A stretch of DNA of 63,829 bases, counting the filler, from Platydemus manokwari (taxonomy: Eukaryota), in assembly GCA_037951405.1 (NCBI GenBank). It is 6 parts of 6 records of this genome, joined end to end, with 100 filler letters (N's around TTAATTAATTAA, not from the genome) between each part and the next. Parts side by side here need not be neighbours in the genome. Positions count along the whole stretch, not along the records: positions 30,996 to 41,061 come from JBBMOY011172545.1; 5 more parts are not named here. The stretch is one strand, 5' to 3'. Below the pieces are notes generated by a model. The model saw only the letters and a list, made by a program, of their open reading frames with translations. It did no database searches and was not told where the DNA came from. Position numbers and translations under genes: made by a program. Below are positions 30,996 through 41,061 of this stretch, piece after piece (position 1 is the stretch's first letter; every line of letters begins with the position of its first letter).

Positions 30996-32224
30996 AGAAC
31001 AACAGTAAGATAATACATTTAAAATCACATATTCAATTATCTATAACGCATATTCTCCCTATTTATAGAGCCGAGTCTCGGAATACCCCCTTGAATTGTA
31101 TAAAAATCCCGTCGTTTATGTGTATAAAAGTAGCTTCATAAAATCATTTGTATTCATTGTATAAAAGTACCGTAAAAGTAGTAATTCATAATCCCATAAT
31201 TGTATAACTGTAGTCACAATATAATTTCATAACCGTAATTTGAGTTGACTTATTAAATTGATATAAGGTATCACAAGTTCATAGTAATGATCGTCATTGT
31301 CATTCACCACCTATTTTGAAGTAATGTCGGTTAATTAAATAGAGACTGATTAATAACGAGTGAGGACTGAGTGAGAGTGAATAGTATTAAAATCTGAAGG
31401 ATAAAGTTAGAAATAAAATACCAATATCAATATCTACGCCGATCCACTTATCGACATATAAGAAGTGATCGTCGAGGCGAACAAAATAATAAAACTCTTA
31501 AGGTCAAAATACTTTCTGAGCGTCAATAACGGACTCAGAGCACTGATTAAGTCGTAGTATCGATCAATCAAAAGAAAGAATAATAAATCATAAAAGACAG
31601 TGACCCCAAAACGTATCAATAAAATAAAATAATATTTAGCGGGAATAATATTTAAGGTAAAGAGTTTAAATATTATTAATAATATCCTTGGTAATAAAAT
31701 TCCATTGTTAAAAAGAAATAATAGTTAATATTTGGGAAATCCTCGGTGAATTAAAATATCATGTAGCGTTTTTAAGCATTAAAAACCATATAAATAGGAG
31801 TTAAAAACACCAGAACTCGCTCATTATTTCATCGAAACCACTAGACTACAGTGCGTTTGAAAACCCACTATTAAGCTAAATTACTCGAAGATTGTTAGAA
31901 GATTTGCTCGACGATAGAACATACCAATACCATATTGCCATTTCAAATAGTGAGTGAGATTGTTTTGTAACTAACTGATTTGAACTTATAGTACGTATCG
32001 TCTATCATATTATTATAGAGCTTTGCTCAAAAACATCTTTAGTATTCGGTTTTACACCAAGAAAAGGACGTATTAACCGCTATCATCTGAAATTGTAGGT
32101 TTAGCCTTTGATCCAACTTTTTATTTCGGTGTATATCAGTATTGCAAACTGTAATTTTGCTGTTGTTTAGCTGTAAAGAAGAGTTACGTTGTTGATCGAT
32201 AACAGAGGAATAAATAGTTATAAA

Positions 32225-32470
32225 ATAATCGAGTCTGATAGGATTAAATTAACCCTTTTAGATCATTGTTGCAAATCATTTCTATATTCATATAGATTTG
32301 ATTGCGAGGTGAAAGAAGAAATAAATATAATGTTTAAGGGGCACCTTGGCCTTGATTAGAACTCGCAAGAGACTGATCAAGACAACAGTGATCCGTGAGC
32401 AAAATCATAATAGAATTTTATTGAGAGTGATTAAAACAAAAAATTCAATTTACAAGCCCGAAACGCATCA
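32225..32470 (+). repeat. Dispersed repeat (probable LTR segment), inverted copy of 13640-13885
   Basis: Shared blocks ctgataggatta, gatcattgttgc, gcgaggtgaaa, gactgatcaagacaacagtgatcc.tgagcaaaatcataa, acaagcccgaaacgcat. Confidence 0.85.
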
Positions 32471-33593
32471 AATTTAATGTTTAAGTTTATTACGCTGTTC
32501 ATCACTGTAATTACTATAATTTATATCGAATCTACTACACACCCCAATCAACAGCAGCTTACATTCCCAGTAAAAGCAATGAGATACAGTTTTAAGAAGA
32601 ATTATGATAAGAAGAATGTGAGCACATAAGTGGTAATTTGAAAGTTATTCTATAGACAACACATTTCATTAGCTAAACGTCTATAATATTCTAATGCCAC
32701 AAGGATTTAACGTTTCATTTAAAAAGATCGATTAGAAAACTACATCAGACACAGAAACTTTACCACCATTATTTTAAAGCAAGAGTTTTACTTAACTAAA
32801 TTTTCTGCCAGACAAGGAATTCTTTGAAGAAAATCTATAAACCATAGAAGTTTCAAAAGAAATAATTTCACTTAATTGTTAGTAAAGTAGCCGCGCTCGT
32901 CGTTTCCATCTGATTCTCTGTATTTATCGAGTGGATATTCACAACAACTAAGTTACACATTTCGATAAATTTATTTGATTGATACAATTTGCCGTTTTAT
33001 TATTCAACCAAATTTGTTATCGATCACCATAATGTAGAGCAACTAGATTTATTTGAACAAATTAAGATTAGTGGATCATCTTATAGAGTATACATTAATG
33101 ATGTCATATCTAGCTATATATCTATCTGTATATTGTCATGATAATCAGTTACATTGACTTCAATAACATTATTAACGACAATCATGAGTTAACCTTTAAA
33201 ATTCATTATAGTTTCCTTATCATAAGATATTATTAAAGGCACTCCAGAATAAAATAAAATCAATCACAATAAATAACAAACAACCACCAAAACTCGAACT
33301 ATTTCAATAAATTGAAACTCTTTAGAATGTATTGAGCATACCGCATTAGATATTACACTTTACCATGAAGTCTTTGAAATTAAAATGATATTGGGACATT
33401 TATTCAATTTCACATCACACATTCTCGACAATAAAAGAATTAAACCATACATTTTACTACATCAAAAGATAAAATTCAAATTACAATTTCCATTTCAAAA
33501 TCATATATTTATACAAAAATCCCTTCCGATATCAATTCTTTCGATGATTGACATTATTATACACACAAACAAATGGTATTTTTCCCAATATTT

Positions 33594-36500
33594 TTAATAG
33601 ACGACATCAATCGAATCATTGGACAGAGATAAATCTTCTAATCAAATGCAACACAACAATTAATTATCAATCCATCTTAATCATTTTACTCACTTGTAAA
33701 TACAAATTTATCTCTGGACATCAGAATTTTAGCCATTCTATAAATGAAATCTTGTAATTTTTTATTGTTCACTACTTCGGATTCTATTTCAACAAAATTG
33801 CATTTGGGAAGATAATGATCAATGGGAAAATCTTCATGTAATCTGATAAATAAATATCAACAATGGTTTTGACATGATTCCATGTATTCAAATTTAATAT
33901 AACATTAAATTAATCAATAAAATTTTATTGATTCACTAAGATATAATACATGATCATTGATATTGATTAATTTAAACAAATAATTATAAAAATGTAATAA
34001 GATCAAAAACCAAATAAACGCTCAACAACAATAATAACTGAATAATTAATAACGAAAAAGAAATAATCCGCAACCGGAACGAATTCATGATGAATTCAGT
34101 GATGCCGAAATAATATCTAATTGATTACAGAAAAACAAATTTCCAAACGAGTGAATGCACAAAAACTGTCCATAAAGAGAAATGATTCATTGTTGTGAAC
34201 GAAACAGTTCCTGCTCAATCAGTCATGGACAATATAGATAGGGGAACAGATAAAACAAAAATAGTTGCGCAGAGATAAAACGCTCAAAAATACAGCTGAT
34301 ATCAATATTTCATATGAAAGTCATATCTATGACATTCTTAACAATGATATGAAGAATTTGGATGTCATTCAACCGTTTTTTGCAGGTTTTATTTAATTTT
34401 AAAAATATTAAATAACACACAACGCTTACTGTCATGTCTGAACGCCAGGTCAGCCTGTTAATCAATAAAATTTTAATTCATAATTACTTTTCAATAATAC
34501 TAAGAAACTAGCACATTTTACTGTGCATAATGCACGTAAATCACTCAGTTCATGGAATCAAGCAAAATTAAGCGATATATCGCGTTTATATATACTGACG
34601 TTTTCATTGGTATTGATGAAGTAACTATTAGTAACCACGAAATAACTATTTATAATGCTAATCAATAAAAATGTCAAAGATATCTTATTCGATGTTTTAC
34701 TTTATTAAATTCGATAAATATTATATAAATCACATAAAGATTTTACCAGTCTTGATAAGTGAAACCCATGGCAACCGTGCGCCGTAATATACATGCCATT
34801 AATTATTGCTGCACTTAATGCATCCCCCTATTTTCATATCGACAAATCAGAGTTCAGGGCGCACATTATAAACAATAAAATACGGAAATCGTTAATTATA
34901 ATTGGTTGTGCACTAACAAATTAAATTATTCCTCGGGAATTTATCATAGAATATTTTAATAAAATGCACATTTTAGTCAATGGTCAATATAAATGGTAAA
35001 CAAAAACCTGAGCGAAACATTGCAAAACAGATATCTCAACAGCAAAACCCGAGATACCGATTCGCACATAAACAATCGCAATTGCTTATTCTTTTCCACG
35101 TGAATTCTCAACTCATCCAGCATCACAAACATCAATTCATTGAGACAATGTTCCAATTGTTGCCAGACACTGTATTCGATATTGAATTGGCCACAAATCC
35201 AACAGAATGCCTTCAATGGTGAACAAAGAAACAAAGTGAACAGATGGCCGTGATTCTCTTGCTCTATACAACAAGAAAACGATATTAATGCGTAATAATT
35301 ATAAATAAAATAAAAAGGAAATAGTCATAGTGTATCATTAGAGACATCGAAAAATAGAAATAAATAAGAAAAAAATAAAGAAAAACAAAAGAAAATAGTC
35401 ACGGTGCATTGACACCAGAGGGAAAAATAGAGAAAAATTAGAAAAAATAGGGAGAAATAAAAAGGAGTAGCTGCGGTGTGTTGACATTGAAAGGAAAAAT
35501 AGAGAAAAAATAGGAAAAAAAACCAAAAGGAAAAGTCATGATGTATTAATGTGCGATGAAAAAAAGAAAAAACTTGAAAAAAAATAAAAAATAAAGAAAA
35601 AACTAATGCCATACTAATATAAGTCGGATAGGAAACTGGTGAAAGCAAGCACAACAGTGGTTCCGTGATGTGATCTTTGATTTGGTGGAATTCATGGCTG
35701 GATTCGCTGTCAATGATGACGACAGATGGGCAAATGATTAACGAAATGATATCCATTGGCAACATACTTCAAGTGGTCAGGATCGAAATGAAATTAACAC
35801 ACACAAAACAATTCAAACAACAACCCACCATTCATCGATCGGATGGTCGACATTTTCATCAGCAAATTGTTTCATTTTCAAACCCTTTCTATCCAAACCC
35901 ATTCCGGGATCGGTTTTGTCTGAAAACGATCAACATCAAACGATTTCATTCAAACGCAAATTTCGATATTCACCCTCAGACAAGATTTCGAACATATCGG
36001 CATTGATATAAAGGAAGAAAATGCCATTTCTCGACATTTTATAAGTGGCATCATTGATACCGAGTAAAACATCATAGATGCTTGGGTTGTAAAATGTCCA
36101 TTTGCGAGCATTGACATGCTTGTCAGTGGGATCTAGAGATCGTGACAGATTATGTATATAAATCAAACAAATATCAATCAAGGTGTGTTAATTCCTTGAA
36201 AATTGCCCTACTTCGTCTGTTATATGGATTCTGTTCAATTGCGTGACATATGCGAAACATATCAATGGTAAAATTGCGATAAAATCGCTGCGTAGCACAC
36301 GATGCAATAATGACTGCTCTTTGCAATCGAAATCCTTCACAGTTCAAATTTTCCAATTCATACGGTTGACAACCGATTCGAATGTTGATATCCATCGGTT
36401 GACGATTATCATTCATTACAACAATGCCCGTTGCACAATCATATAAATCGCGCATCTTTTTAAACAGTTCATGAAACTCTACTTTGAGAAAACGATTATT

Positions 36501-37140
36501 TCGTACGTAATGTGCACGATAGGCCTAGTGAAATGAAAACAAAACAATTCTAATATTATCAATCAAAACATTTGTTCGCTCACGCTTAATTCGTTTTTAA
36601 TATTCGTCATTTGATTGAGAAAAAACAAAACAAAAATCTTATTGGCATAAAATTTACATTTGTCTCGTATAAGGTAATTACTAAAAATCGAAATTATGAA
36701 GTTCAAGATATCAACAGAAGTTAATTATCAAATATCTTTACCTTTGAACAATTGGATAAAATTCTACAATTAAATTATGTATTTCCAATACTTTAAATAA
36801 AGAACCAACATCTGATACGTTAATGCTAAGGAAAATTTAAAAATACACTGAACGTGGTTAAAATTACTATAAATATAAATATTCATTCGACAGTTGTCGG
36901 CCAGACACAATTAGTTCCTCGATTAAAGTTGGATCCGATGAAACTTCAAACTTTCTGAATAAACATAAGAATTCTTCTCGCTTATCATAAAAAACCTGAT
37001 TTAAGCTAAAAGATATTATTCATTAATATATTATAATGTTTAATGATAAATTTTAATTTTAAAAGAAGAACGTACGATTTTTTTGTACTTGATTTAGTTT
37101 GAAGTTTATTCGAATTGGAATTGGAATTTAAAGTTGTCAT
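33594..37140 (-). CDS. SCAI: SCAI-like protein (suppressor of cancer cell invasion), ~11 exons
   Basis: ATG at 37140. Exons include 36524-36212, 36132-35974, 35919-35829, 35766-35615, 35263-35008, 33842-33694 and 33637-33594, plus four upstream exons. Peptides CKFYANKIFVLFFLNQM, FTIDMFRICHAIEQNP, PLLCLLSPVSYP, GHLFTLFLCSPLKAF, LLLRYLFC…RLH and VVNNKKLQDFIYRMAKIL parallel SCAI motifs (LTVDMFRMLQALEREP, PLVCLLSP, GSLFTLFL, LLTRFIFC) in order. Confidence 0.88.
35310..35610. repeat. Degenerate ~70-bp purine-rich minisatellite (~4 units) in an SCAI intron
   Basis: Recurring unit a(a/t)agtc…gtg..ttgaca…gaaaaatagagaaaaa…aaaag. Confidence 0.7.
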
Positions 37141-40100
37141 TTGTGTTATGATATATTTAAACAATTTTAAATAAAGATTTATATTTTTATTTTGATAAAG
37201 AAAAATCAATGTTTAAGAGTTTTATATATAAATAATTGTATTTCATAATTTAATTAAATTTGTAAATGATGTCAATTAATTGTCTAAATTAAAATTTTTT
37301 AATTTTTAAAATTTAAAAGATGAACAAATAAGATTATTTGAAATCAAATATTGCTAAGCGGATGATTTCTGTAAATAATTCAATTTTATTCGGGATCTAA
37401 CTTAATTCTAAACGAATAAAAGGCAAAAAAATTAAATTCAAATTTTAATTTGAAACAATCCACAGAGTTAAAGCTAAAGTATTTTATTTCGAATGAACCT
37501 ATTATCATGGAAAATGCTTAGCAAAATTTTTATGCTTGAGGTCGAATTTTGACATAAAAAAATGTTTAGAATCATTATAAAAACATAATGATTTCGAAAA
37601 TTCAACAAATATCAAAACTTAAAACTTGAATTGAATTACCATACTTTTTCTACAAGTTAGTAATGTGATAAATAAATAAATAAATAAACCAAATTGAAAA
37701 CATTTATCACAATTATTATGATCCAATCAAGAAATTTCAAAAGTGAAAACCAGATTTTTAGCTTAACCTTTTATTTCTTACTCATTTTTGAATTGAGCAG
37801 GAGGTAAAAATATTTTTACTAAGAAATTAAAGAATACAATTTATGTCATTTTCGCAAACGGATTATGATTAAATAATCATTAACTAAATGTGTTTCCAGA
37901 AGCAATATTGGAAGTAATATTTCTTTAACATTCATTTTCATTTATATTTTTAGTTGGGCAAAATACATTATTTTTATAAGATATTAAATAAAAAACGTCA
38001 TCTAAAATAATCCTAGATCATGTTTCTGTCTTAAAAATTAAAAATTCTTAATTAATAAACATCTATTCCTTGTTTGGTTTTGATGAAAACGGTTTCAAAC
38101 AAATTTATTAATATGAATTCACACCATAACTTCAGAATTTGAAAGCACAACAATTTCAGCCGTAATAAAAGAAAGAAAATAACCAATTTATTTGATTAAA
38201 TTTTAATTAAAATATGCAGGGTATCAAATTAACTCTTTAATTATCATTTAAATTTAACTTGTGGTTGTGAATAATTATTCCATAATTTACTAACTAAAAT
38301 TTTCAATAATAACTGAGAATAACATAATCCTGGCATTAAAATTATATTTGGTTAAACATTCTGAGATGTACATAATATAAAAATATCATTTCAAGACTTT
38401 TTTTGATTTTCCACGGAAAATACCAGTAAAAATTTAAAAAATAATCAGGTTCAGGATTTTACCTAACCCTTTTACAATAAACATTTAATTTTTATGCCTT
38501 AGTGATTTAGTGATTCACAGTACTTGATTTGTGCGTATAAAATATATTCAGGTTAATTATTTAATACGTTTAGTCACAATATTTTCTTAATAGTATTTTA
38601 AATGGTACCAAATTATAATATTATATGATAATATTCTTATTTTTGGAAAATATTTTGGTAATTTGAGTGACAGGTTAAAATTCATCACAATCAATTATCC
38701 CAATTGCATGCGATATGGATAATAATATGATTAAAATCCCTGTTATCTGAAGATAATAACCTCATAAAAATAAAATAATATTTGTATATCCAAAATGGTA
38801 GCAATAGATGTAAAAATAATTTATAAAATATAATGAATAATCCTAAATAATCAATTGTATAAACAGTAATGACCCTATCACATAAGACAATGGGACGTTT
38901 AAATAAATAAATATGTATAAAAAGGGTACAAGATTCAATAGCCTTGTCAGAATTTTGAAACAACTAGCACCACTTGAGAATATTGAGAAATTACTTCTCA
39001 AAGAAGAACGCCATCGATGTTTTTTATCCAAACATCAAGTTATTAATCATCAAGTTCATAAAGTTGAACTCGGAAAGAATTACGTTTTATAAAATCTTTA
39101 TTAGCATTCACAACATCCGTCTTATGTATGCAATTAGTCGAGCTCTGCTCATCCTTGCAAGTGACTCGTTTCATCTGTGTTGATAATAAGCACACTTTAT
39201 CCAGATTGAGTTGGTTATTGATCGAATAATAAAGATCATAATCATATTTGTTACTGAGATGTCTTCAATTGTCAGTTCATTACCTTTAAGCGCTAGTGAG
39301 GTGTTCTGAAGAAAATATATGACTGCCAAATTACGAGGATTGTGGACAGAAAGTCCCTACTGTTGAAACTCTTATAATCAACAAATTACGAGCACAGTAT
39401 CGGAGAACAATTCGAGGATAATATAACTTAGTTATAGAATAGAATAGAGTAGACTTAATAAAAATTTATTTCAAGCGTAAATATAAAGTTTATAAAATTT
39501 CGATATTCTTAAATTTCCTGTAACCTTAATGTATCAAATTACAAATCAAACACTGGTTTAATAGTGATTAAAATTGATATTAGTAGAGTATCGAAGGTAT
39601 CTGATCACAAGAACGACTGTCAGTTTTTATTCTTTCTAAAGTTAAACGACCACTATAATTATTTAATCGTATTTCGCAGTAATAACTGAATTATTTATCA
39701 AATATTCTGTCTCTCAAATTCAAGTAATAAACAAACCATTTGCAGATCCATTAAATAACAAAATCTGCACCGTAAACAAAATGTTGTAAATATATCCATA
39801 CGACGATAACAAATTTTAGATATTTTTTATATGTATCTTTTGGTATTACAAAGTATGATAAATATAGGTGTATTGTGTAGTTGACATTTATTTGAAACAC
39901 CTGAACCAAAAATTTACATAATAAAAGTCTTATCAAATGGTAATAAAGTTTTTGTTTAACTAAAACAGTAAAATTAAAAAATCAAAATTTCATATACCAA
40001 TATATACTGTGAACATTAAGGAACATTGCTATATAATGACCTTGACGATAATTCTGAAAATATTATTACATGCACTCTTTCTGAATGTTAATATCAAATA

Positions 40101-40612
40101 CGAGTTGAGTATGAAAAATAAGGAGTATTGATATAAGTTTTTTAAAATTTCACTTTAATCACAATATTTTATTGTTTATGTATATCAATTTAGGAATAAC
40201 CACTTTCTTTCGGCCTATTTCATGAAAAAGGAAATTGGAAATGCTTATTTCTTCACAACGAAAGATATTGCTTCGAACCATCTTTCCTTATTTAATACTT
40301 TTACTCTAAGCCGGAACTAAACATATATAATATAGTTAGAAACCTTAACTAATATCTTTGAATATTAAAAATGAATTTATGATAAACTCCTCGAGGAAAT
40401 AATAAGTAATAGCATTCGTTTTATGAGAAATTTGTAAATGTGTTAGCAAAAGTGATCTATCAATCATCGTTAATTATGAAAGAGTAATTAGAGCTACAAA
40501 CATTACTCTTAATTATAATAATTGTTATTATTATTATTATTAATTAATGTATTATGGAACAATTCCACAGCTCTCTTTTGACGATAGGAGATTAACCGGC
40601 AACACGTAATCG

Positions 40613-40620
40613 TATAAATA
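40613..40620 (+). promoter_or_regulatory. Candidate TATA box of the prohormone gene
   Basis: TATAAATA ~60 nt upstream of the ATG at 40672. Weak evidence in AT-rich DNA. Confidence 0.4.
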
Positions 40621-40671
40621 ACAAATACAATTATCAGAACTTGAGAAAAATTCACAATTGTAATATTTTCA

Positions 40672-40893
40672 ATGGAGAAGACTTATTTTCTTATATTAAT
40701 ATTTGTTACAGCTTTCGCTGTAATCGTACAAGGTTCCGATTCAATGATGGAAAATGCATATTTGCAGAATCAAATTCTCAAGAATAGAATGTTGAAAAGA
40801 ATGAGCCAACAAATGGAAACCCATCCGAATTCTATGAATATCATTCGACGAAACTGGGAAAACTTTTTCGGTGGATCTCGTCAGAGATTTTAA
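40672..40893 (+). CDS. Small secreted neuropeptide prohormone (73 aa)
   Basis: Signal peptide MEKTYFLILIFVTAFAVIVQG and dibasic convertase sites KR and RR, releasing MSQQMETHPNSMNII and the C-terminal NWENFFGGSRQRF. Confidence 0.8.
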   Translation: MEKTYFLILIFVTAFAVIVQGSDSMMENAYLQNQILKNRMLKRMSQQMETHPNSMNIIRRNWENFFGGSRQRF

Positions 40894-40969
40894 TGTTCGT
40901 CTGACTTTTGAGTTTTAAACAATATTTGATTAAACTTTATCAGAGTTTTGTTAATAGTTTTTAATAATT

Positions 40970-40982
40970 TTATTATTATTGC

Positions 40983-41058
<76 letters not shown>

Positions 41059-41061
41059 GTT
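40970..41061. repeat. (ATT)n microsatellite at contig end
   Basis: ~30 att triplets with rare gtt variants. Confidence 0.95.

What the first reader, a model, noticed from the sequence alone, without database searches (positions are those of the whole stretch)
40672..40893. Candidate neuropeptide prohormone yielding a non-amidated …QRF peptide
Seen: signal peptide, KR and RR sites, and the terminal peptide NWENFFGGSRQRF followed directly by a stop. It has no Gly donor, so it is RF-OH rather than RFamide. From memory (unverified), it resembles the planarian SPP-12 peptide pattern N-[YW]-x-[DN]-FFG…QRF, so it may be a new member of a flatworm-specific peptide family. Such 73-aa single-exon genes are often unannotated.
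Basis: partly seen in the sequence, partly recalled or inferred. Interest (0 to 1): 0.7.

Follow-up and report, generated by a model that had tools for sequence, protein, structure and literature searches.

The report
Unlisted flatworm neuropeptide gene, SPP-12-like
A small, intron-free gene encodes a secreted precursor whose last 13 residues form a non-amidated "…QRF" peptide related to planarian SPP-12; a near-identical peptide seems to have been detected in planarian brain in 2016 but mis-sequenced, so this is probably an uncatalogued neuropeptide gene of a known kind.

Summary
Window 40672-40893 (+) is a 73-aa ORF with a hydrophobic signal-like N-terminus, KR (42-43) and RR (59-60) sites, and NWENFFGGSRQRF directly before the stop, with no Gly amidation donor.

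ORF length alone is not significant (0.67 such ORFs expected per shuffled piece). The gene is supported by three results:
- **Homologue.** A search of 1.84 billion proteins gave one full-length relative, P0001 (78 aa, E 1.3e-8). It has the same MEK start, the same RR, the peptide NWEDFFGGTRQRF and the same stop. Identity is 13/15 in RR plus peptide against 19/63 elsewhere (p = 9e-5).
- **SPP-12.** Smed-SPP-12 yields the MS-confirmed free-acid peptide KR.NYMDFFGLNGDMQRF.KK. The chance of so good a match is about 8e-6 per comparison.
- **Mass spectrometry.** Ong et al. 2016 list a Schmidtea brain-enriched ion, m/z 1646.0, read de novo as NWEDFF-FKDAAK(ac)S-amide. That tail is isobaric with GGSRQRF-OH (788.418 against 788.404).

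The gene is absent from the Collins 2010 catalogue; a 2026 preprint still counts 52 known neuropeptide genes. Expression in this organism and the organism's identity could not be tested.

Verdict: a real SPP-12-like prohormone gene and a new member of a known kind. Interest is moderate.

The parts
40613..40618 (+). TATAAA, a possible TATA box 59 nt upstream of the ATG (inferred only)
   Evidence: the only TATAAA in 40500-41000. In DNA this AT-rich, a chance occurrence is not negligible.
40642..40644 (+). In-frame TGA that closes the frame upstream of the start codon
   Evidence: read directly from the sequence.
40672..40893 (+). Complete single-exon coding sequence, 73 aa plus TAA
   Evidence: Full-length homologue P0001: E 1.3e-8 against 1.84e9 proteins; BLASTP 41% identity over 1-73.
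40672..40734 (+). Predicted signal peptide, residues 1-21, with cleavage after V-Q-G
   Evidence: hydrophobicity and the -3/-1 rule. The MEK.Y..ILIF start is conserved in P0001. Heuristic only; SignalP was not run.
40735..40845 (+). Poorly conserved pro-region, residues 22-58. It contains KR at 40795-40800, which is not conserved in P0001.
   Evidence: 11 of 42 aligned columns identical; the KR of this protein aligns with KE in P0001.
40846..40851 (+). Conserved RR dibasic cleavage site, residues 59-60
   Evidence: invariant in both sequences.
40852..40890 (+). Terminal peptide NWENFFGGSRQRF, predicted free acid, MH+ 1644.77
   Evidence: 11 of 13 residues identical to P0001. Alignment score 34 against the SPP-12 peptide, P about 8e-6. 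The Asp-4 variant is isobaric with the de novo sequence of the m/z 1646.0 brain ion.
40929..40934 (+). ATTAAA, a possible polyadenylation signal 36 nt after the stop (inferred only)
   Evidence: There is no AATAAA in 40500-41000. Weak evidence in AT-rich DNA.

Best explanation
This is a real, intron-free gene for a small secreted prohormone of a flatworm, most likely a planarian. It is a paralogue-type relative of planarian spp-12. The inferred pathway follows the established prohormone route. The 73-aa prepropeptide enters the ER, and signal peptidase cuts after about G21. A PC2-type convertase cuts after the conserved RR60, and possibly after the non-conserved KR43. The C-terminal 13-mer NWENFFGGSRQRF is then released as it stands. 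No Gly follows the final Phe, so peptidylglycine amidating enzymes have no substrate and the peptide ends in a free carboxyl group (RF-OH), as the MS-verified SPP-12 peptide NYMDFFGLNGDMQRF does. It is most likely made in brain neurons and acts as a neuropeptide on an unidentified receptor. Shown here: the ORF, its features, the homologue, the conservation pattern, the SPP-12 motif match and the mass identity. Inferred: the processing steps, neuronal expression, the receptor, and the promoter and polyadenylation signals.
For: - **ORF and features:**
- **Homologue:** one full-length relative among 1.84e9 representatives (P0001, E 1.3e-8). It shares the start, the RR, the terminal peptide and the stop.
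- **Conservation pattern:** identity is 13/15 in RR plus peptide against 19/63 elsewhere, Fisher p = 8.7e-5. This is the usual pattern for neuropeptide precursors.
- **SPP-12 match:** the SPP-12 peptide and its free C-terminus are documented by MS. The alignment score of 34 was reached by 5 of 600,000 random 13-mers; P0001 scores 38 and the Asp-4 variant 39, and 39 was never reached.
- **Brain ion:** Ong 2016 Tables 1 and 3 list a cephalic-ganglia-enriched ion, m/z 1646.0, with AUC 1.00. It falls to 0.3 of the intact level 3 and 6 days after decapitation and recovers to 0.9 by day 12. It was read de novo as NWEDFFFKDAA-Kac-S-amide. That reading has MH+ 1645.764; NWEDFFGGSRQRF-OH has 1645.751.
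- **Prohormone criteria:** the protein meets Collins 2010's operational criteria of a signal sequence, basic sites flanking the peptide and a length under 200 aa.
- **Language-model neighbours:** nearly all are small peptide-hormone precursors, at scores of 0.83-0.90, which is a lead only.
Against: - There is no transcript or peptide evidence from this genome.
- Only one homologue is known. Its DNA and source organism are unavailable, so no dN/dS test was possible.
- The window encodes Asn at peptide position 4 (MH+ 1644.77), whereas the Schmidtea ion fits Asp (1645.75). The link therefore needs a species or strain difference, or deamidation.
- Similarity to SPP-12 is confined to about 13 residues.
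- The signal peptide was judged by heuristics only.
- The assignment of the 2016 ion is my inference from mass arithmetic, not a re-analysis of the spectra.
Confidence: 0.8

Rival explanations
1. This is a chance ORF in AT-rich non-coding DNA, and the prohormone-like features are coincidental.
For: An ORF of 73 aa or more is expected 0.67 times per shuffled piece. TATAAA and ATTAAA are easy to find in DNA of 27% GC. The exact protein is not on record in gene-call collections.
Against: The full-length homologue has the same start, the same stop and an in-frame 5-residue indel, with E 1.3e-8 in a library of 1.84e9 proteins. Conservation is concentrated in RR plus the peptide. The match to SPP-12 has P of about 8e-6. 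A matching ion was seen in planarian brain.
Confidence: 0.04
2. The gene is real and secreted, but it is not a neuropeptide. It could be, for example, a gland, mucus, antimicrobial or pheromone-like peptide.
For: No expression data exist for this organism. A short cationic, aromatic C-terminal peptide is not diagnostic of neural function. The receptor is unknown.
Against: The matching ion in S. mediterranea is a marker of the cephalic ganglia and behaves like SPP-12, SPP-4 and SPP-6 during regeneration. spp-12 itself is expressed in the cephalic ganglia and ventral nerve cords.
Confidence: 0.09
3. This is simply the spp-12 orthologue of a flatworm other than Schmidtea, not a separate family member.
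For: The motif N-[YW]-x-[DN]-FFG…QRF is shared, the precursor length is similar (70 against 73 aa), and the organism is unidentified.
Against: S. mediterranea appears to make both peptides: NYMDFFGLNGDMQRF and an NWEDFF… ion of the predicted mass. That points to two genes in one species. The architecture also differs: SPP-12 carries a further C-terminal peptide, QQFFRNHRPEIEWN, after KK, while here the QRF peptide is terminal in both this protein and P0001.
Confidence: 0.07

Closest known systems
Smed-SPP-12 (secreted peptide prohormone 12, Schmidtea mediterranea; Collins et al. 2010, PMC2953531)
   Same: Both are precursors of about 70 aa with a signal peptide. Both carry a peptide that follows a dibasic site, fits N-[YW]-x-[DN]-F-F-G-x(2-4)-x-Q-R-F and has a free, non-amidated C-terminus. 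The SPP-12 peptide is MS-confirmed, and spp-12 is expressed in the brain and nerve cords.
   Different: In SPP-12 the QRF peptide is internal. It is followed by KK and a second peptide, pQQFFRNHRPEIEWN. Here the QRF peptide ends the protein and is 2 residues shorter. I saw no similarity outside the peptide by eye.
Cephalic-ganglia marker ion m/z 1646.0, assigned to dd_Smed_v4_15196_0_1 '(no signal peptide)' (Ong et al. 2016, PMC4825013)
   Same: The de novo prefix NWEDFF equals the start of P0001's peptide and differs from the window's by N4D. The de novo tail is isobaric with GGSRQRF-OH, and the whole-peptide masses differ by 0.013 Da. The ion is brain-enriched.
   Different: The published sequence and assignment differ, and the ion was not called a prohormone product. 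The window's own peptide is 0.984 Da lighter (Asn instead of Asp). I could not check whether dd_Smed_v4_15196_0_1 is the orthologous transcript.
RFamide neuropeptides (FMRFamide-like peptides, NPFF with its PQRFamide end, QRFP/26RFa)
   Same: The C-terminus is …(Q)RF, the peptide is released from a small secreted precursor at basic sites, and the context is probably neuronal.
   Different: These families are defined by C-terminal amidation from a Gly donor. Here the stop codon follows Phe directly, in both homologues, so no amide can form. No sequence homology was detected (Pfam blank).

Membership tests
Planarian neuropeptide prohormone (operational criteria of Collins et al. 2010) | N-terminal signal sequence | tested here: met
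   hydrophobic residues 4-19 and V-Q-G before the cleavage point. The feature is conserved in P0001. This is a heuristic; SignalP was not available.
Planarian neuropeptide prohormone (operational criteria of Collins et al. 2010) | Basic cleavage sites flanking predicted or MS-confirmed peptides | tested here: met
   RR60 precedes the terminal peptide and is invariant in P0001. KR43 is present here but not conserved.
Planarian neuropeptide prohormone (operational criteria of Collins et al. 2010) | Shorter than 200 aa and not similar to genes annotated otherwise | tested here: met
   The protein is 73 aa. Pfam gave only a sub-threshold chance hit. There are no named relatives.
Planarian neuropeptide prohormone (operational criteria of Collins et al. 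2010) | Verified by cDNA or transcript | not testable with these tools
SPP-12 family | Mature peptide N-[YW]-x-[DN]-FFG…QRF directly after a dibasic site | tested here: met
   score 34, reached by 5 of 600,000 random 13-mers. The best 13-mer elsewhere in the piece scores 25.
SPP-12 family | Free-acid C-terminal Phe (no Gly donor) | tested here: met
   The stop codon follows Phe73 directly, and the same holds in P0001. SPP-12's peptide was observed non-amidated.
SPP-12 family | Second C-terminal peptide (QQFFRNHRPEIEWN) after KK | tested here: not met
   The protein ends at QRF, both here and in P0001.
SPP-12 family | Detectable homology over the whole precursor | not tested
   SPP-12 has no reference id, so the full-length alignment was left out. 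It did not appear in the phmmer search, but I do not know whether the library holds it.
RFamide peptides (FLP, NPFF, QRFP) | C-terminal RF followed by a Gly amidation donor and a basic site | tested here: not met
   The sequence reads …QRF then TAA, with no Gly.

The most novel reading that the evidence does not exclude
Flatworms have a small family of free-acid …QRF neuropeptides, comprising SPP-12 and this gene. This gene would be an unrecognised 53rd planarian prohormone gene, and its product would be the brain-marker ion m/z 1646 that was mis-sequenced in 2016. Because the peptides are never amidated, their receptor would recognise an RF-COOH end. That is a ligand type distinct from the RFamides.
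Probability: 0.5. Interest if true: 0.5.

Novelty: new member of a known kind. Interest (0 to 1): 0.42.

Why it matters
Planarian neuropeptide work, including an RNAi screen posted in October 2026, still uses a list of 52 genes. A missed, brain-enriched peptide gene would extend that list. It would also give a correct identity to a published regeneration-marker ion. With SPP-12 it would define a conserved non-amidated QRF peptide family whose receptor could be sought. More generally, it shows that single-exon genes of about 70 codons escape annotation and that de novo MS tags can be re-read from genomic ORFs.

Tried and rejected
- **Pfam on the 73-aa protein:** only a sub-threshold Listerin HEAT hit (E 0.034), taken as chance.
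- **Word-index protein searches:** the single sequence gave nothing; the two-sequence profile returned only P0001.
- **P0002:** this second hit is a 1958-aa Ser/Thr/Asn-rich repeat protein and was rejected as a compositional match.
- **JGI metagenome scan with the profile:** 481 pattern matches, none a relative.
- **Exact-sequence look-ups:** neither the protein nor two neighbouring ORFs are on record. P0001's contig has no DNA available.
- **Organism identification:** a word search with a SCAI exon gave nothing, so the organism stays unidentified.
- **Literature string searches:** no paper other than Ong 2016 holds the peptide or its parts. No paper besides Ong 2016 mentions dd_Smed_v4_15196.
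- **Collins 2010 supplements:** there is no 1645/1646 mass in Table S6, and the sequence is absent.
- **Local sequence checks:** Rfam found nothing in the piece, there are no inverted repeats or transposon ends around the gene, and there is no second copy of the motif in the piece.
- the full-length alignment to SPP-12 was not run, because the 70-aa sequence has no reference. Only its 15-residue peptide was used.
- **Not checked:** the parasitic-flatworm catalogues (Koziol 2016, McVeigh 2009) are not in the library.

Full report
**1. Observation**

The ORF is in the piece (30996-41061) exactly as described. It runs from the ATG at 40672 to the TAA at 40891-40893 on the + strand and has 73 codons. 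An in-frame TGA at 40642-40644 closes the frame ten codons upstream, so this ATG is the first possible start.

- The N-terminus, MEK followed by sixteen mostly hydrophobic residues and V-Q-G, looks like a signal peptide with cleavage after G21. Mean Kyte-Doolittle score is +2.69 for residues 4-19 and -1.09 for the rest. This is a heuristic; SignalP was not available.
- KR lies at residues 42-43 and RR at 59-60.
- NWENFFGGSRQRF (40852-40890) precedes the stop directly, with no Gly, so amidation is not possible.

Length alone is not evidence. Shuffles of the piece give 0.67 ATG ORFs of 73 aa or more on average. Four of the five observed ORFs of that size sit on or opposite exons of a neighbouring gene.

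**2. Is it a gene?**

Pfam and the word-index search were blank. I therefore ran the exhaustive phmmer search of 1.84 billion representatives.

- It returned one true relative, P0001. This is a 78-aa protein from a 1102-bp contig of an ENA metagenome assembly, with E 1.3e-8, aligned over residues 1-73 of the query and 1-78 of the hit.
- A second hit, P0002, is a 1958-aa Ser/Thr/Asn-rich repeat protein. I take it as a compositional match.
- P0001 starts MEKVY…, has a hydrophobic leader and ends …RR-NWEDFFGGTRQRF-stop.
- Start, stop and RR coincide in the two proteins. One 5-residue indel is in frame.
- Identity is 13 of 15 columns in RR plus peptide, 8 of 21 in the leader and 11 of 42 in the pro-region. 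Fisher's one-sided test gives p = 8.7e-5.

A diverged spacer next to a nearly invariant peptide behind a conserved dibasic site is the standard pattern of neuropeptide precursors. Homologous non-coding DNA at this divergence would not be expected to keep it.

The KR at 42-43 aligns with KE in P0001. Cleavage there is therefore not a conserved feature, and the two upstream fragments are probably spacers.

No further relatives were found by the profile word search or by a JGI metagenome scan. P0001's DNA and organism are not available.

**3. The SPP-12 lead**

Collins et al. 2010 (PMC2953531, Tables S2, S3, S5) give Smed-SPP-12 as a 70-aa prohormone. They detected KR.NYMDFFGLNGDMQRF.KK by MS in sexual and asexual animals as a free acid. 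They classed it among "miscellaneous non-amidated peptides" and reported expression in the cephalic ganglia and ventral nerve cords.

| Peptide aligned to the SPP-12 15-mer | Local BLOSUM62 score |
|---|---|
| Window peptide NWENFFGGSRQRF | 34 |
| P0001 peptide NWEDFFGGTRQRF | 38 |
| Asp-4 variant NWEDFFGGSRQRF | 39 |

- A score of 34 or more occurred in 5 of 600,000 random 13-mers of this composition. A score of 39 never occurred.
- The best 13-mer elsewhere in the real piece scores 25.
- Corrected for about 250 catalogued planarian peptides, the match is still unlikely by chance, at roughly 2e-3.
- The shared positions (N1, aromatic 2, D/N4, F5, F6, G7, Q-R-F) are the ones conserved between the window and P0001.

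By eye there is nothing in common outside the peptide. The architecture also differs: SPP-12 continues with KK and a second peptide, whereas here the protein ends at QRF.

**4. An unexpected link to published mass spectrometry**

A full-text string search found "NWEDFF" in one paper only: Ong et al. 2016, J Biol Chem, PMC4825013.

- Their Table 3 lists a marker ion of the S. mediterranea cephalic ganglia at m/z 1646.0, sequenced de novo as NWEDFFFKDAA-K(ac)-S-amide. It was assigned by BLAST of the high-confidence residues to dd_Smed_v4_15196_0_1 "(no signal peptide)".
- Their Table 1 shows the ion is ganglia-specific (AUC 1.00). It drops to 0.3 of the intact level at 3 and 6 days after decapitation and returns to 0.9 at 12 days, like SPP-12, SPP-4 and SPP-6.
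- The de novo prefix is the first six residues of P0001's peptide and differs from the window's only at position 4.
- The odd tail FKDAAK(ac)S-NH2 sums to 788.418 Da, and GGSRQRF-OH sums to 788.404 Da. The whole de novo sequence has MH+ 1645.764, against 1645.751 for NWEDFFGGSRQRF-OH, a difference of 8 ppm. That is inside their 15-50 ppm precursor tolerance.
- The Thr variant of P0001 (1659.77) does not fit.

My inference is that S. mediterranea makes NWEDFFGGSRQRF-OH. Its N-terminal half was read correctly, and the Arg-rich tail was filled in by the software with an isobaric combination.

The window's own peptide has Asn at position 4 (codon AAC; MH+ 1644.767), which is 0.984 Da lighter. Either the window comes from another strain or species that differs by one transition, or the observed ion is the deamidated form. 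I cannot decide between these.

If the inference is right, S. mediterranea has both the SPP-12 peptide and this one. That makes the two genes paralogues rather than orthologues. This section rests on mass arithmetic and a table, not on spectra.

**5. Is it already catalogued?**

- The complete Collins 2010 supplement (not cut) holds QRF and FFG only in spp-12, and none of NWE, FFGG, SRQR, GGSR or MEKTY.
- Ong 2016 added only spp-20.
- A preprint of October 2026 still counts "52 known" neuropeptide genes.
- No other searchable paper holds the peptide strings or the transcript id.
- The parasitic-flatworm catalogues (McVeigh 2009, Koziol 2016) and PlanMine are not in reach, so "uncatalogued" is provisional.
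- dd_Smed_v4_15196_0_1 may itself be the orthologous transcript, perhaps truncated at its 5' end.

**6. Surroundings**

- The piece has 20-36% GC.
- On the minus strand, 34977-36524 carries at least four exons of a metazoan SCAI homologue (PF12070, profile positions 168-524).
- SCAI's N-terminal part was not found between 36524 and 41061. It is therefore open whether the peptide gene sits in a 5' intron of SCAI or upstream of it, head to head.
- The gene is flanked by ATT-type microsatellites at 40512-40555 and 40970-41058.
- There are no inverted repeats, no second copy of the motif and no Rfam match.
- A single TATAAA at 40613 and an ATTAAA at 40929 would give an mRNA of about 0.3 kb. Both are weak evidence in such AT-rich DNA.

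**7. Mechanism**

The steps below are inferred from the established prohormone pathway. Its planarian enzymes PC2, CPE and PHM are described in the 2026 preprint.

1. Co-translational secretion, with signal cleavage near G21.
2. Convertase cleavage after RR60.
3. Release of the C-terminal 13-mer, which needs no carboxypeptidase trimming and cannot be amidated.
4. Storage in and release from brain neurons, followed by action on an unknown receptor, presumably a GPCR.

The intact 13-mer mass in the 2016 data argues against internal cleavage at the single Arg residues.

The language-model neighbours of the protein are almost all small hormone precursors: PDH, DH31, NPF, gastrin/CCK, PrRP, galanin, spexin and NPS. 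Their scores are only 0.83-0.90, so this is a lead and no more.

**8. What could not be done**

- The source organism could not be identified.
- "Flatworm, probably a triclad planarian" therefore rests on the SPP-12 relationship, the Schmidtea ion and the base composition.

**9. Verdict**

- My estimates are: a real conserved coding gene, about 0.93; a neuropeptide prohormone, about 0.8; evolutionary kinship with SPP-12, about 0.65; identity of the m/z 1646 ion with the Asp-4 form of this peptide, about 0.75.
- It is a new member of a known kind. It is useful to planarian neurobiology and corrects a published ion assignment, but it is not surprising in principle.

Noticed in passing
window 34977-36524, minus strand: At least four exons of a metazoan SCAI homologue (PF12070) match profile positions 168-524. 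The N-terminal exons were not found within the piece, so the peptide gene may lie in a 5' intron of SCAI or upstream of it, head to head.
   Followed up: partly
window 40512-40555 and 40970-41058: ATT/TTA-type microsatellites flank the small gene on both sides. The downstream one (about 30 copies) runs to the end of the piece.
   Followed up: no
Ong et al. 2016 (PMC4825013), Table 3, m/z 1646.0: The published de novo sequence NWEDFFFKDAA-K(ac)-S-amide is isobaric (0.013 Da) with NWEDFFGGSRQRF-OH. The assignment to dd_Smed_v4_15196_0_1 '(no signal peptide)' may therefore be a mis-reading of the tail, or may refer to a 5'-truncated transcript of the orthologue.
   Followed up: partly
P0001 (ENA assembly ERZ27256860, 1102-bp contig, gene at 572-808): The only homologue in 1.84 billion proteins comes from a metagenome assembly. 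This presumably reflects flatworm DNA in an environmental or host-associated sample. Its DNA could not be fetched.
   Followed up: partly
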